From Octopus sinensis (taxonomy: Eukaryota): DNA of 32,049 nucleotides. Made by a program: the position numbers and the translations under genes. Below the pieces are notes generated by a model. The model did not search any database. It was not told the origin of the DNA and saw nothing but the letters and a program-made list of their open reading frames with translations. Position 1 is the stretch's first letter; every line of letters begins with the position of its first letter. Location of the stretch: NCBI RefSeq assembly GCF_006345805.1, contig NW_021832202.1, forward strand, positions 1 to 32,049, written 5' to 3'. Below are positions 893 through 23,365 of the stretch, piece by piece.

Positions 893-1704
893 TGTTAATT
901 TTTGGGTTATTTAAATTAATGTTAAAGATACCAATTTACTATTCTGTTTCCTTCAAAGTCGATTATGATGAGTTCTAAGAGCTTACTTGATAAGCTAAAA
1001 ACAGTAGCTATATCTCCTCTCTTAATTCAACCCTGCTCGCTCAAAGAATGAAAAGCACATTTGATAACGTTGGTCTAAATACCCCCTAAAAGACTGAATA
1101 GTAGTTGATGCTGTGATTTTATTGATTTTATTTATTGATTATTTATATTTATTTTTAATATATATATAGGAATCTAAAGGATGATAATATTAAGTATAAA
1201 ACAAATTGGTTTTATAGTTATAAAACACGCGTTTTCCAGTGTTAATGGTTGTAGAAGATGTAATTTTAGTCTCCCAGAAAAGTACGATATTCTCTTATAG
1301 CAATTTTGAACAAAAAGCTGGTGTTAGTGAAGTCGTGCAGACACTTCTATCGATATTTGCTGAGGAATTTCCAACAACCAATTGGCCGAAATAGAATATC
1401 GTTCATATGAAAAAAGAAAAGAAAAGAAAAACTGGAAATTACAATGTACTAGAAATCAAAGACAGCTGTAAAACATTAGTAAAAAGAACATGATAGAAAC
1501 ATTATATACGAAATTCTTTTTAATCAATAATTTTTTCCAATCGCTGATCATTGAATCCTGTTGGTGTGATGCTTTCACGATCATCCAGGTCTTCGTTGGC
1601 GGTTAATCAAACTAAACCTCTGTATGTTTGTTGAAAGGATGCGCTTCCAAGCAGTTCTACAAGTGCAATTCAAAATATTTTACACGAAGTAGATGAGCGT
1701 ATGT

Positions 1705-3224: not shown

Positions 3225-3424
3225 TACAAGACCTGAAATTTTGGGGTGGGGGGTCAGTCGATTACATCGACCTGTGTTCAACTGGTACTTATTTTATCGA
3301 TCTCGAAAGGATGAAAGGCGAAGTCGACCTCGGTGGAATTTGAACTCAGACCGACGTAGCGACAGGCGAAATACCGTTGAGCATTTCGTCCAGCGTCCTA
3401 ACGATTCTGCCAGCTTGCCTCCTT
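3225..3424 (-). mobile_element. Family B (Nin-domain) SINE
   Basis: Contains atcga..ccgaaaggatgaaaggc.aagtcgacctcgg.ggaatttgaactcag, with the tRNA-like head at the right end. Confidence 0.8.

Positions 3425-3824: not shown

Positions 3825-3876
<52 letters not shown>
3755..3876. repeat. (CAA)/(CAG)/(TAG)n compound trinucleotide repeat downstream of the GPCR stop codon
   Basis: Directly visible. Confidence 0.9.
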
Positions 3877-3877
<1 letters not shown>

Positions 3878-4123
3878 AAAATAATGAAGATGGTGAAACA
3901 ATGGGCGATTGTTATGGTCTGATATAGAACAACACACAAACATGAAATGAAGGAGTTGTGTTGGAAAAAAGGGGAGAGGTTAAGGTTAAATCTTTTAAAC
4001 TCCTTTTCCCGGCCTTAGGCCTTAGTTTCCAACGTGTCATGGGGCTTGTGCTCATTTTTGCTTTATGCAAGAAATCATTATAATTGTTAATTTTACTATT
4101 CATATTTTCTCTCCCTTTTCATA

Positions 4124-5263
4124 TCATGTACCTGAGGCTGAAAAAGAAGCAATTTCGTCAGCTTTCGGCTGTTCTTTGGAGGTTTTTCTGCAGAAGTTTA
4201 TGGTAATTCTGAACCTTTCGTTGATGAATACGTAGACAAATGGGTTGACACAAGTATTTGCGAAAGCAAAGTAGGAAGACGTGATTAACATCCAAGAATG
4301 CATCTGGTGATATTCGTAAGCGCCATCATACTGAATGACTATGAAAGCGATGAAAATAGGTAACCACATCAGGAAAAAGAGTAGGACGAGCAGAACAAGA
4401 ATCCTGATGACACGTAAACTGCGGAGGCTTCGTACTTTCATATTATGTGAAACGAGTTTGCTGCTATGAGACCGCAACGTGCTGGCGGCTGGTTGAACGG
4501 CCATATTAACAGTTGGTTGACTAGAACTACATTCCTTCTTTATGATTGTCTGTCGGGAAATCCAGAATGTTCGGAAGACGCGGTAATAGTTGTGGGTCAT
4601 TAAGGCCAATGGTACGATGAAACCCACCAAAACCAGACAGGAAACGAAAACTATGGAAACTTGGACTGTAGTATTTGAAGGCCACACCAACGTACATATT
4701 TGAATTGTGTCGTTGCCGAAGGGAAATGCGTAAATGTTGAAAAATGTGGCCATTGGTAAGAAACCGGCGAATGCAATGACCCAGATCAGGATGACAATAA
4801 CAATAGCCATCGTCAGAGATATACGACAGCAGTTTGGTTTTACAATACAGAAAAAACGCTCGATGCTAATCACAGTCATGGTCCAAATGACAGCAAACAT
4901 ACATACAAACTCTAGATAGATGATAATATGACAAAAGAAGCCACCCAGCACCCATGTGCCGGTGATTCGAACCACTGCAATGAATGGGCAGCCGGAACTG
5001 AACAGCAAATCGGCCATTGCCAAGTTTGCTATGAAACAGTTTGTGACAGTCTTCAGTTGTCTTACTCGTAAAACACGTATAATAATTAGAATGTTAGCGA
5101 CAACAGATATCAAAAAGATAACGATGTAGATGAGTGCTTCAATGACTCCGATTCCATTCCAAGGACGGTTAAATTCTGAAAAGAAGGTAAAGTAACTTCG
5201 GTTTCCCCAATTATAAACTGTGTCCATTCCATAAAAATAAGAGGAATTTAAAGAATTCGCCAT
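4124..5263 (-). CDS. FFAR4: Rhodopsin-family (class A) GPCR, free fatty acid receptor 4 (FFAR4/GPR120)-like, 379 aa, intronless ORF
   Basis: Seven hydrophobic segments; GN-equivalent (AN) in TM1; LAxADL in TM2; ECL1 W-x6-C; ERF at the DRY position; ICTLVWP in ECL2; FFLMWLP in TM6; NPFVY in TM7. Matches to human FFAR4 as recalled: NRSYFTFFSE vs NRTRFPFFSD, ADLLF..P...VR..W.LG...CH...Y, ERFFCIV vs ERMVCIV, ICTLVWP vs ICTLIWP, FAFANTCVNP vs FTFANSALNP. Confidence 0.88.
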   Translation of the reverse strand: MANSLNSSYFYGMDTVYNWGNRSYFTFFSEFNRPWNGIGVIEALIYIVIFLISVVANILIIIRVLRVRQLKTVTNCFIANLAMADLLFSSGCPFIAVVRITGTWVLGGFFCHIIIYLEFVCMFAVIWTMTVISIERFFCIVKPNCCRISLTMAIVIVILIWVIAFAGFLPMATFFNIYAFPFGNDTIQICTLVWPSNTTVQVSIVFVSCLVLVGFIVPLALMTHNYYRVFRTFWISRQTIIKKECSSSQPTVNMAVQPAASTLRSHSSKLVSHNMKVRSLRSLRVIRILVLLVLLFFLMWLPIFIAFIVIQYDGAYEYHQMHSWMLITSSYFAFANTCVNPFVYVFINERFRITINFCRKTSKEQPKADEIASFSASGT

Positions 5264-5491
5264 TTTAAAATTTTTTGTTGTCTGTATACTCCTAAGGTTT
5301 TATTATTTTTATAATACTGTGTTTTGCGACCAAACATCAATCAACAGACAATCCCATCCATAATTTAAATAAGGCGGTTTTCCTTCGTTTTGTTTATCAC
5401 TTTCCTGTCTTCTGTTTTCTCCTGTTAGTTCTCTGTCGTCTGCTTCAAAGTACTTCGATTCATTTTCCTCTTACTGTCGTCTGCAGCAAAT
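5264..5491 (-). other. Probable 5'UTR part of the GPCR coding exon, with a splice acceptor at 5492-5493
   Basis: The minus strand reads ...atgatattttgtctctttcAG|atttgctgcag, a polypyrimidine tract plus CAG about 230 nt upstream of the ATG. Confidence 0.5.
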
Positions 5492-5579
5492 CTGAAAGAG
5501 ACAAAATATCATTTTAGATATACGCTTTCTCTTTTTAGGAAACGCCAAAATATTATATTATACACGATGAAAGCACAAG

Positions 5580-8390: not shown

Positions 8391-9490
8391 ATGGTGGTGG
8401 CGGCAGTGGTAGTTTTAGAGTAGGAGCAGGAAAAGGGGTGGTGGTGGGAGTGGTGATAGTGTTGCTGTTGTAAGTGGTAATGGGGGCGGCGGCGACGGTG
8501 ATGAAAGTGTAGGGGTAAAAGTACGAGAAATGACAATGGTGGAGTACTGGGAGGGGGATGGCATTACGGTTTTGCTGTTGTTCATATTAATGTTAATTAT
8601 AGTGGTGATGATGGTGGTGATGATGGTAGTGGTGGTGGCGGTGATGATGGAGGTGATGATGGTAGTGGTGGTGGCGGTGATGATGGTGGTGATGATGGCA
8701 GAGGTGGTGGTGGTGGTGATGGTGGTGATGATGGTAGTGGTGGTGGTAGTGATAGTGGTGATGATGATGGTGGTGTGATGATGGTAATGGTGGTTGAGGT
8801 GATGATGGTGGTGATGATGGTAGTGGTGGTGGCGGTGATGATGGTGGTAATGATGGTAGAGGTGGTGGTGGTGATGATGGTGGTGATGATGGTAGAGGTG
8901 GTGGTGGTGATGATGGAGGTGATGATGGTAGTGGTGGTGGCGGTGATGATGGTGGTGATGATGGCAGAGGTGGTGGTGGTGGTGATGGTGGTGATGATGG
9001 TAGTGGTGGTGGTAGTGATGGTGGTGATGATGATGGTGGTGTGATGATGGTAATGGTGGTTGAGGTGATGATGGTGGTGATGATGGTAGTGGTGGTGGCG
9101 GTGATGATGGTGGTAATGATGGTAGAGGTGGTGGTGGTGATGATGGTGGTGATGATGGTAGTGGTGGTGGTGGTGATGGTGGTGATGATGATGGTGGTGT
9201 GATGATGGTAATGGTGGTTGAGGTGATGATGGTGGTGATGATGGTAGTGGTGGTGGCGGTGATGATGGTGGTAATGATGGTAGAGGTGGTGGTGGTGATG
9301 GTGGTGATGATGGTAGTGGTGGTGGTAGTGATGGTGGGGTGATGGTGGTGGTGGTGGTGGTGGTGATGGTAGTGATGATGGTGGTGGTGATGGTGGTAGT
9401 GGTGGTAATGGTGATGGTGTTGGTGGTGATGATGATGAGGATGGTGGTGGTGGTGATGGTGATGGTGGTGGTGGTAGTGGTGGTGAGATG
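8240..9490. repeat. (GGT)/(GAT)/(AGT) compound trinucleotide array with higher-order units
   Basis: Directly visible; the marker gtgatgatggtaatggtggttgagg recurs at 8775, 9041 and 9199. Confidence 0.9.
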
Positions 9491-9584
9491 GGCAGTTAAA
9501 GTGGTCAGTCTTTAAATAACTAAATAGCATACAACTTGACCCTATTACTTTAGTGAGTTTACAAGTGGTGTTTACGTGTGTAAA

Positions 9585-22789: not shown

Positions 22790-23365
22790 AGAATAGCAAG
22801 TTCTGGGGAAGGGGAGGAGTCGATTACATCGACCCTAGTGTGTAACTGGTACTTATTTTATCGACTCCAAAAGGATGAAAGGCAACGTCGACCTCAGCGG
22901 AATTTGAACTCAAAACATAAAGACAGATGAAATACCTATTTCTTTACTACCCGCAAGGGGCTACACACAGAGAGGACAAACAAGGACAGACAAACGGATT
23001 AAGTCGATTATATCGACCCCAGTGCGTAACTGGTACTTATTTAATCGACCCCGAAAGGATGAAAGGCAAAGTCGACCTCGGCGGAATTTGAACTCAGAAT
23101 GTAGCGGCGGACGAAATGCCTATTTCTTTATTATCCATAAGGGGCTAAACATAGAAGGGACAAACAACGACAGACATAGGTATTAAGTCGATTATATCGA
23201 CCCCAGTGCGACCCTCAGTGTTTCACTAGTACTTATTTAATCGACCCCGAAAGGATGAAAGGTAAAGTCGACCTCGGCGGAATTTGAACTCAGAACGTAG
23301 TGGCGGACGAAATACCGCTAAGCATTTTCTCCGGCGTCCTGGCGATTTTACCAGCTCGCTGCTTT
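22790..23365 (-). mobile_element. Family B SINE as a head-to-tail trimer
   Basis: The Nin-domain block occurs three times. The linker tatttcttta starts at 22937 and 23121 (184-bp period), and only the rightmost unit has the 5' head. Confidence 0.85.

What the first reader, a model, noticed from the sequence alone, without database searches (positions are those of the whole stretch)
4124..5263. Invertebrate FFAR4/GPR120-like receptor retaining the fatty-acid-binding residues at identical positions
The protein lines up with human FFAR4 (sequence recalled) without gaps and with the same numbering: N21 sequon (NRS vs NRT), R22, F25, F27, F28, S29, R99 (codon 4969-4967), W104, C111, H112, Y116, E135 and R136. 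It also has ICTLVWP in ECL2 and MWLP in TM6. R99 is the established carboxylate-binding residue of FFAR4, and the N-terminal Phe residues help cap the pocket. FFAR4 is usually discussed as a vertebrate long-chain/omega-3 fatty acid sensor. A mollusc copy with the pocket intact would imply ancient bilaterian lipid sensing, possibly in taste or gut.
Basis: partly seen in the sequence, partly recalled or inferred. Interest (0 to 1): 0.7.

Follow-up and report, generated by a model that had tools for sequence, protein, structure and literature searches.

The report
Octopus member of FFAR4 receptor family
This is an intact octopus gene for a cell-surface receptor of the same family as the human omega-3 fatty-acid sensor FFAR4; public databases already label it that way, the family occurs across bilaterian animals, and nobody has yet tested what the octopus receptor binds.

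Summary
The window is from Octopus sinensis. NCBI already names the product 'free fatty acid receptor 4-like isoform X2'. Membership of the FFAR4 family is well supported. A profile of 30 lophotrochozoan homologs hits human FFAR4 best among solved structures (213 bits against 185 for NPY2R). Human FFAR4 scores mollusc members (103-140 bits) above any other solved human GPCR (81 bits or less). A neighbour-joining tree puts the octopus protein and vertebrate FFAR4 in one clade with 96-99% bootstrap, apart from KISS1R-, NPY2R-, NPFFR- and GPR83-like receptors. Family-only residues are all present: N-terminal Phe lid, E1.35, R2.64, M6.47, ECL2 CTLxWP. Two corrections apply. Cryo-EM shows R99 does not bind the carboxylate; it pins the lid through D30 and E43, and octopus keeps that triad (E30, E42, R99). 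The pocket is only partly kept: 7 of 15 DHA-contact residues are identical, and Glu replaces Met at 3.32. The family also occurs in amphioxus, a crinoid, a brachiopod, a nemertean and insects. The ligand is untested.

The parts
4124..5263 (-). Uninterrupted 379-aa ORF, stop codon TGA at 4126-4124 included, encoding the whole seven-helix receptor. The start ATG at 5263-5261 sits in an AAAATGG context.
4132..5263 (-). First coding exon of the NCBI-annotated isoform X2 (393 aa). It ends at G4132, followed by a GT donor at 4131-4130. Reading through the donor gives the 379-aa form that ends ...SASGT.
1607..1656 (-). Second small coding exon of isoform X2. The AG acceptor is at 1658-1657. It encodes (E)LLGSASFQQTYRGLV plus a stop, so only the end of the C-terminal tail changes.
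5161..5203 (-). N-terminal 'lid' segment, residues 21-34 (NRSYFTFFSEFNRP). It holds the N21 glycosylation sequon, F25/F27/F28 and E30, and is equivalent to human N21-D30.
5138..5140 (-). Codon for E42 (position 1.35), the partner of R99. Glu in 90% of family members and 0% of the nearest non-members.
4967..4969 (-). Codon CGA for R99 (position 2.64). Arg in 97% of family members and 0% of non-members.
4910..4912 (-). Codon for E118 (position 3.32), a charged residue where human FFAR4 has the ligand-contacting M118. Glu in 5 of 6 cephalopod sequences.
4679..4699 (-). ECL2 motif ICTLVWP (residues 189-195). C190 is the disulfide Cys and W194 corresponds to human W198.
4358..4378 (-). TM6 switch region FFLMWLP (residues 296-302). 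M299 at 6.47 is family-specific, W300 is 6.48 and P302 is 6.50.

Best explanation
[quoted passage not shown] The gene is intact and under purifying selection. The whole receptor lies on one coding exon, and an optional small 3' exon alters only the tail.

Inferred mechanism, by homology to the human FFAR4 cryo-EM structures. The N-terminal segment (residues about 20-35) folds down over the helix bundle as a lid. R99 (2.64) is salt-bridged to E30 in the lid and E42 (1.35) at the top of TM1, and this pins F25/F27/F28 over a largely hydrophobic pocket lined by TM2, 3, 5, 6 and 7. A hydrophobic, lipid-like agonist, most simply a long-chain fatty acid or a close derivative, reaches down to F215 (5.47), F296/F297 and W300 (6.48). 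TM6 then moves and a G protein is engaged through the ERF (3.49-3.51) and NPFVY motifs.

Not known: which lipid, which G protein and which tissue. My graded confidence is about 0.9 for family membership, about 0.6 for a lipid-like ligand and about 0.4 for long-chain free fatty acids specifically.
For: Identity: the ORF is 100% identical to the NCBI protein 'free fatty acid receptor 4-like isoform X2 [Octopus sinensis]'.

Profile search: a profile of 30 lophotrochozoan homologs hits human FFAR4 first among 177,635 PDB sequences, at 213 bits (E 4.9e-62) against 185 bits for NPY2R. The alignment starts at residue 20 in both proteins.

Reverse search: human FFAR4 scores 103-140 bits against mollusc members and 103.5 against the octopus protein. 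Its best score against any other solved human GPCR is 80.8 bits, for OX2R.

Phylogeny: a neighbour-joining tree of 142 sequences has an 88-member clade that contains octopus, human, caecilian, teleost, lamprey, amphioxus, crinoid, mollusc, brachiopod, nemertean and arthropod sequences. Bootstrap support is 98%, and 96-99% when the N-terminal columns are removed or a different distance is used (names).

Family-only residues, all present in octopus: E1.35, R2.64, M6.47, F25 and CTL in ECL2.

Structural role of these residues: PMC10780892.

Pocket character: positions that are polar in the neighbouring peptide receptors (6.52, 6.55, 6.59, 7.39) are F, F, Q and S in octopus.

Structure model: AF2 gives pLDDT 80.9 and pTM 0.79, with an unusually well-ordered N-terminus (pLDDT about 83 for residues 11-40).

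Selection: dN/dS is 0.13 against a congener.
Against: With the single octopus sequence as query, CCKAR (120.9 bits) and OX2R (115.9) score slightly above FFAR4 (108.6) in the PDB. Foldseek does not separate FFAR4 from peptide receptors.

Overall identity to human FFAR4 is only 28%. Only 7 of 15 DHA-contact positions are identical. A Glu sits at 3.32, deep in the pocket, where human has Met, and F303/F304 are Leu/Ile.

Branching inside the family is poorly resolved (bootstraps 4-56%), so one-to-one orthology is not shown.

No invertebrate member has a published ligand in the library searched. One insect homolog is labelled 'Orphan Neuropeptide Receptor 2'.

I could not inspect the model coordinates to confirm that the lid is inserted.
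Confidence: 0.6

Rival explanations
1. It belongs to the FFAR4 family, but its ligand is not a free fatty acid. The buried Glu118 at 3.32, together with Gln311 at 6.59, has retuned the cephalopod pocket for a lipid with a polar or cationic head (for example an N-acyl amine, a lysolipid or a sphingoid-type molecule) or for another amphipathic small molecule.
For: E118 is present in 5 of 6 cephalopod sequences, where vertebrates have Met. The other invertebrate members carry Q, M, L or E at this position. Eight of the 15 DHA-contact residues differ. In human FFAR4 binding is driven by hydrophobic contacts and the carboxylate makes no specific contact, so head-group preference could drift easily.
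Against: The lid network and most of the hydrophobic lining are conserved. A buried Glu can simply be protonated or structural. There are no functional data either way.
Confidence: 0.22
2. It is an orphan neuropeptide receptor. The sequence neighbours of the family are all peptide receptors, and the invertebrate branch may have kept an ancestral peptide ligand while only vertebrate FFAR4 switched to lipids.
For: The closest non-family sequences are KISS1R/GPR54-like, NPY2R, NPFFR2-like and GPR83. The best single-sequence PDB hits are CCKAR and OX2R. Q at 3.32, typical of those peptide receptors, is the commonest residue in the non-cephalopod invertebrate members. Some homologs are auto-named NPY2R-like, or 'Orphan Neuropeptide Receptor 2'.
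Against: The lid-pinning triad and the aromatic lid that closes the pocket from the outside are conserved from octopus to human. The peptide-receptor hallmarks are absent in octopus: acidic 6.59, His 7.39 and polar 6.52/6.55. The clade separates from the peptide receptors at 96-99% bootstrap.
Confidence: 0.15
3. It is a decaying or non-functional gene copy that resembles FFAR4 only by general GPCR similarity.
For: The gene sits alone in a 32-kb stretch dominated by microsatellites and SINE-like repeats.
Against: The 379-codon frame is intact and all class A microswitches are present. dN/dS is 0.13 against a congener. Orthologs at 64-88% identity exist in other cephalopods. The FFAR4-specific residues are conserved.
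Confidence: 0.02

Closest known systems
Human FFAR4 / GPR120 (omega-3 / long-chain fatty acid receptor; PDB 8T3Q, 8T3O, 8ID3, 8G59, 8H4L and others)
   Same: It falls in the same clade (96-99% bootstrap). It has the same N-terminal motif N-R-S/T-x-F-x-F-F-S-D/E at the same residue numbers. The R2.64 / E1.35 / acidic residue 30 triad is the same, as are F2.53, the ECL2 motif ICTLxWP, TM6 FF(I/L)MWxP with Met at 6.47, and an E-R-x variant of the DRY motif. Seven of the 15 DHA-contact residues are identical.
   Different: Identity is 28%. The pocket substitutions are F115I, M118E, T119F, G122M, W207F, F211L, I284F, L288Q, F303L and F304I. ICL3 is longer. There are no functional data. R24, modelled near the carboxylate in human, is Tyr.
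Invertebrate 'FFAR4-like' orphan receptors named by automatic annotation (oysters, scallop, abalone, chiton, Lingula, nemertean, amphioxus, crinoid, many insects)
   Same: The octopus protein is one of these. It shares 35-45% identity with the mollusc and brachiopod members, and all carry the motifs WGN(R/T)(S/T)YF(T/S)(F/Y)FSEFNRPW and ICTLxWP.
   Different: The cephalopod branch has Glu at 3.32 and ERF rather than DRY at 3.49-3.51. None of these receptors is characterised, so nothing known is being compared at the level of function.
Kisspeptin (GPR54), NPY2, NPFF, GPR83, orexin and CCK type peptide receptors
   Same: These are the nearest non-family class A receptors by score. They share the fold and the ECL2 beta-hairpin.
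   Different: They lack the N-terminal lid motif, E1.35, R2.64 and M6.47. They carry Cys at 6.47, acidic 6.59, His 7.39 and polar 6.52/6.55, which the octopus protein does not. They lie outside the clade.
FFAR1-3 (GPR40/43/41)
   Same: The only overlap is nominal, in ligand class (fatty acids).
   Different: They are unrelated in sequence (stated in PMC10780892) and absent from the best 60 PDB hits listed in each search. Their carboxylate-binding Arg pair at 5.39 and 7.35 is V207 and L326 in octopus.

Membership tests
FFAR4 / GPR120 family | Class A seven-helix receptor fold | tested here: met
   Pfam 7tm_1 at 5e-48. The AF2 model has pLDDT 80.9 and seven helices plus helix 8.
FFAR4 / GPR120 family | Closer in sequence to FFAR4 than to any other characterised receptor, in both directions | tested here: met
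   The family profile scores FFAR4 at 213 bits against 185 for the next hit. Human FFAR4 scores octopus at 103.5 and molluscs up to 140 bits, against 80.8 or less for other solved human GPCRs. Caveat: with the single octopus sequence, CCKAR and OX2R score 7-12 bits above FFAR4.
FFAR4 / GPR120 family | Falls in one clade with vertebrate FFAR4, apart from other receptor families | tested here: met
   The 88-taxon clade has 98% NJ bootstrap, and 96-99% without the N-terminal columns or with a gamma distance. This is a distance method only, and the outgroups are the top database neighbours rather than the full human repertoire.
FFAR4 / GPR120 family | N-terminal aromatic lid (F25, F27, F28) preceded by the N21 sequon | tested here: met
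   NRSYFTFFSE at residues 21-30, against human NRTRFPFFSD at 21-30.
FFAR4 / GPR120 family | R2.64 bonded to an acidic lid residue and to E1.35 | tested here: met
   R99, E30 and E42 are present. R2.64 occurs in 97% and E1.35 in 90% of family members and in 0% of neighbours. The bonding itself is inferred from PMC10780892 and was not seen in a structure of this protein. The third partner, F304 (7.36), is Ile.
FFAR4 / GPR120 family | Met at 6.47 (MWxP rather than CWxP) and CTLxWP in ECL2 | tested here: met
   M299-W-L-P and C190-T-L-V-W-P.
FFAR4 / GPR120 family | Ligand-contact residues of the DHA / TUG-891 pocket conserved | tested here: inconclusive
   Of 15 positions, 7 are identical, 6 are hydrophobic replacements and 2 are polar or charged (E118, Q311).
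FFAR4 / GPR120 family | Activated by long-chain fatty acids, signalling through Gq/11, Gi and arrestin | not testable with these tools
   This needs heterologous expression and assays. No invertebrate data were found in the literature searches.
RFamide / NPY / kisspeptin / orexin / CCK type peptide receptors | Polar peptide-binding residues (Q3.32, acidic 6.59, His 7.39, polar 6.52/6.55) and an open extracellular vestibule | tested here: not met
   Octopus has E118, Q311, S330, F304 and F307, together with the lid motif. It lies outside those clades.
FFAR1-3 (GPR40 family) | Arg 5.39 and Arg 7.35 carboxylate clamp, plus sequence similarity | tested here: not met
   V207 at 5.39 and L326 at 7.35. 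The clamp residues are taken from PMC10780892. No FFAR1-3 chain appears among the best 60 PDB hits listed in each search.

The most novel reading that the evidence does not exclude
FFAR4 would not be a vertebrate invention. It would be the surviving vertebrate member of a pan-bilaterian family of lid-closed lipid receptors whose invertebrate members (molluscs, brachiopods, nemerteans, echinoderms, amphioxus, many insects) are all still orphans. In cephalopods the pocket has acquired a buried Glu at 3.32, so the octopus receptor may sense a different, polar-headed or cationic lipid rather than a free fatty acid. Deorphanising it would define an ancient lipid-sensing GPCR axis outside vertebrates.
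Probability: 0.3. Interest if true: 0.6.

Novelty: new member of a known kind. Interest (0 to 1): 0.35.

Why it matters
If the octopus receptor and its relatives in insects, molluscs and echinoderms do respond to fatty acids, then GPCR-based sensing of dietary or signalling lipids dates to the bilaterian ancestor. A whole set of invertebrate 'orphan' receptors would then gain a ligand class. The conserved R99-E30-E42 lid clamp gives a simple mutational test that carries over directly from the human structures.

The limits are these. The gene is already annotated as FFAR4-like, the family's wide distribution is visible in public databases, and nothing here shows the ligand. It is a sound lead for deorphanisation rather than a surprise.

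Tried and rejected
- **Single-sequence search of the PDB.** It ranked CCKAR and OX2R slightly above FFAR4. I did not take this as placement with peptide receptors, because the profile search, the reverse search, the tree and the signature residues all disagree with it.
- **Foldseek of the AF2 model against the PDB.** All class A receptors score alike (E about 1e-14; FFAR4 is at ranks 4, 6, 7 and 10). It is not informative for family assignment.
- **Checking whether the lid is inserted into the bundle in the model.** The tool returns no coordinates, so only pLDDT and secondary structure could be used.
- **Literature searches for invertebrate FFAR4/GPR120 (one search failed on term length).** Nothing relevant was found. 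The Drosophila gut review mentions only the mammalian receptor.
- **Resolving one-to-one orthology inside the family.** Internal NJ bootstraps are too low.
- **Other long ORFs in the window.** They are translations of microsatellites or repeat fragments, not genes.
- **Neighbouring genes.** The Argonauta ortholog locus has no other called gene within 10 kb on either side, so synteny gave nothing.
- **Non-bilaterian members.** I did not search for them.

Full report
**What is there.** Window 4124..5263 on the minus strand is a single open frame of 379 codons plus a stop. It matches the rhodopsin-family 7TM profile at 5e-48.

The ORF is 100% identical over its length to a 393-aa NCBI protein named 'free fatty acid receptor 4-like isoform X2 [Octopus sinensis]', seen on a contig of exactly 32,049 bases.

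The annotated isoform differs only at the very end. It leaves the ORF at G4132, using the GT donor at 4131-4130. It resumes at 1656, after an AG at 1658-1657, and adds 16 residues before a stop at 1609-1607. The receptor core lies on one exon.

**Check of the observation.** I took human FFAR4 residues 20-344 from the alignment printed by the PDB search and aligned it with the octopus protein.
- The result is 28% identity, 105 bits and E 4e-30.
- N21, R22, F25, F27, F28, S29, R99, W104, C111, H112, Y116, E135 and R136 are identical and carry the same numbers in both proteins.
- ICTLVWP and MWLP are present.
- 'Without gaps' is not exact. Two compensating one-residue indels lie between residues 38 and 73, so octopus E42 equals human E43, and more gaps follow residue 138.

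**Is it really FFAR4-like, or a peptide receptor?**

*Single-sequence search.* Against all PDB sequences the picture is ambiguous: CCKAR 120.9 bits, OX2R 115.9 and FFAR4 108.6. Only FFAR4 aligns from residue 20 onward.

*Profile search.* I collected 30 homologs from cephalopods, bivalves, gastropods, a chiton and a brachiopod and searched with their profile. Human FFAR4 becomes the clear best hit at 213 bits (E 4.9e-62). NPY2R follows at 185 bits, and orexin, NPFF, somatostatin, CCK and galanin receptors are at or below 174.

*Reverse search.* Human FFAR4 scores 80.8 bits or less against every other solved human receptor. It scores 103.5 bits against the octopus protein and up to 140 against other molluscs.

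*Exhaustive profile search and tree.* A search of 1.84 billion representatives gave 150 top hits. I aligned the 141 of them between 300 and 530 residues with the octopus protein and the human FFAR4 fragment (143 sequences; 142 after one gappy sequence was dropped) and built neighbour-joining trees with 200 bootstraps.
- An 88-member clade contains the octopus protein and human FFAR4 with 98% support.
- Support is 96-99% when the N-terminal columns are removed or a gamma distance is used.
- Named members include a caecilian FFAR4, a teleost, two lamprey genes, amphioxus, a crinoid, molluscs, Lingula, a nemertean, a bryozoan, a centipede and a bed bug.
- A further search from the bed-bug protein shows the family in many insect orders. 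Most are auto-named FFAR4-like, and one is called 'Orphan Neuropeptide Receptor 2'.
- The excluded neighbours are GPR54/kisspeptin-like, NPY2R, NPFFR2-like and GPR83-like receptors.

*Limits of the tree.* Only a distance method was available. The outgroups are the nearest database neighbours rather than the full human repertoire. Branching inside the family is unresolved (bootstraps 4-56%), so I claim family membership and not strict one-to-one orthology.

**Family signature.** I compared the 88 members with the 54 non-members column by column. The following residues are common inside the family and essentially absent outside it. Human and octopus share every one.

| Residue | Family members | Non-members |
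|---|---|---|
| E at 1.35 | 90% | 0% |
| R at 2.64 | 97% | 0% |
| M at 6.47 | 85% | 0% (they have Cys) |
| F25 | 84% | 9% |
| T and L after the ECL2 Cys | 86% and 78% | 13% and 7% |

The N-terminal motif N-x-S/T-x-F-x-F/Y-F/Y-S-E/D recurs in the vertebrate representatives and in the invertebrate family. It does not occur in the other top hits.

**What these residues do.** The open cryo-EM paper on FFA1, FFA2 and FFA4 (Sci Adv 2024, PMC10780892) reports the following for human FFAR4.
- The N-terminal segment folds into the helix bundle and closes the pocket.
- DHA is held by F27, F88, F115, W198, W207, F211, W277, F303, I280, I284, I287 and L288, with M118 and T119 also in contact.
- Contrary to earlier models, R99 does not touch the carboxylate. 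It bonds D30, E43 and F304 and so stabilises the Phe lid (F25, F27, F28, F115, F303).

Octopus keeps R99 together with both acidic partners (E30, E42) and all three lid phenylalanines.

**The pocket is only partly kept**. Of the 15 ligand-contact positions:
- Seven are identical: F25, F27, F88, W194 (human W198), W300 (human W277), I303 (human I280) and I310 (human I287).
- Six are hydrophobic replacements: F115I, T119F, W207F, F211L, I284F and F303L.
- Two become polar: M118E and L288Q.

In addition, F304, the cation-pi partner of R99, is Ile.

Glu at 3.32 is present in five of six cephalopod sequences. Other invertebrate members carry Q, M, L or E there, and vertebrates carry Met.

Positions that are polar in the neighbouring peptide receptors are F, F, Q and S in octopus. 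In those receptors 6.52 and 6.55 are Y, N or H, 6.59 is D or E, and 7.39 is His. The pocket therefore looks lipid-like rather than peptide-like, but its exact specificity cannot be read from sequence.

**Is the gene functional?**
- The frame is intact. All class A microswitches are present: D85 at 2.50, ERF at 3.49-3.51, the FFLMWLP segment in TM6 and NPFVY in TM7.
- Against the ortholog of another octopus species (P0002, 88% identity, locus L001), dN is 0.057 and dS is 0.43, a ratio of 0.13.
- An AF2 model built on the 30-sequence alignment has pLDDT 80.9 and pTM 0.79. Residues 11-40 reach about 83, which is unusually ordered for a GPCR N-terminus and fits a packed lid. I could not inspect the coordinates.
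- Foldseek ranks FFAR4 structures among the top hits but does not separate them from CCK, orexin or NPY receptors.

**Most likely mechanism.** This is an FFAR4-family receptor in which an N-terminal aromatic lid closes a hydrophobic pocket. The lid is clamped by R99 bonded to E30 and E42. A lipid-like agonist reaching the F215 / F296-F297 / W300 cluster triggers the usual TM6 movement and G-protein coupling.

Family membership and conservation of the clamp and lid residues are shown. The clamp geometry, the ligand class and the coupling are inferred from the human structures. [quoted passage not shown]

The rivals are:
- an FFAR4-family receptor retuned to a different, polar-headed lipid, because of E118 and Q311 (0.22);
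- an orphan peptide receptor that kept an ancestral ligand (0.15);
- a dead gene (0.02).

**Novelty.** The identification is already in NCBI and UniRef, and the same label is attached to homologs across invertebrate phyla. I found no paper in the searchable library on the function or evolution of invertebrate FFAR4.

This analysis adds three things. It gives a tested case for family membership. It shows that the lid clamp (R2.64, E1.35, acidic lid residue) and M6.47 define the family from octopus to human. It notes that the cephalopod pocket carries a buried Glu. This is a new, uncharacterised member of a known kind and a reasonable deorphanisation target.

**Surroundings.** No other convincing gene lies in the 32 kb. 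The other long ORFs are translations of simple repeats. The Argonauta ortholog also stands alone within 10 kb on either side.

Noticed in passing
window 13925-17328: A 3.4-kb trinucleotide array, (TAT)n with about 1145 copies at 86% match. G+C is 13-15% and GC skew is about -1. It produces several spurious ORFs of 500-800 codons.
   Followed up: partly
window 8602-9491: A G-rich GTG/GTGATG microsatellite organised in 36-nt and 158-nt higher-order units. GC skew is +0.7 to +0.86. It reads as a false 490-aa His/Thr/Ile-rich ORF on the minus strand.
   Followed up: partly
window 20328-20553 and 20841-21729: Tetranucleotide arrays, (GATA)n with 56 copies and (TATG)n with 223 copies. They give many overlapping false ORFs on both strands.
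   Followed up: partly
window 22818-23316, with core copies at 3332, 10266, 22896, 23080, 23276, 26452(-), 27512(-) and 30963: A 184-nt unit repeated 2.6 times in tandem. Its core, GGCGGAATTTGAACTCAGAACG, occurs 8 times in the window where 0 are expected by chance. It looks like a dispersed SINE-like element with a tRNA-like arm. The family was not identified.
   Followed up: partly
window 13117-13761 (-): A 214-aa ORF with a weak match (E 0.003, below the Pfam cut-off) to the zinc-binding tail of reverse transcriptases. It is probably a fragment of a non-LTR retrotransposon lying next to the (TAT)n array.
   Followed up: partly
loci L001-L003 (Logan assemblies of runs SRR11869390, SRR11869391 and SRR11869394): Three independent contigs of about 1.6-1.7 kb from another octopus carry the complete 379-aa ortholog. 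It ends ...SGT, as the read-through form does here. The contigs are colinear with window 5543..3849 at 83% identity. If those runs are RNA-seq, this would be evidence that the unspliced 379-aa isoform is expressed. The run type could not be checked.
   Followed up: no
protein hits: The insect branch of the family covers Hemiptera, Hymenoptera, Coleoptera, Orthoptera, Blattodea, Phasmatodea, Thysanoptera, Psocodea (a louse) and Ephemeroptera. No Diptera or Lepidoptera appeared among the 87 hits. This may be a lineage loss, or it may be an effect of the word-index search.
   Followed up: no
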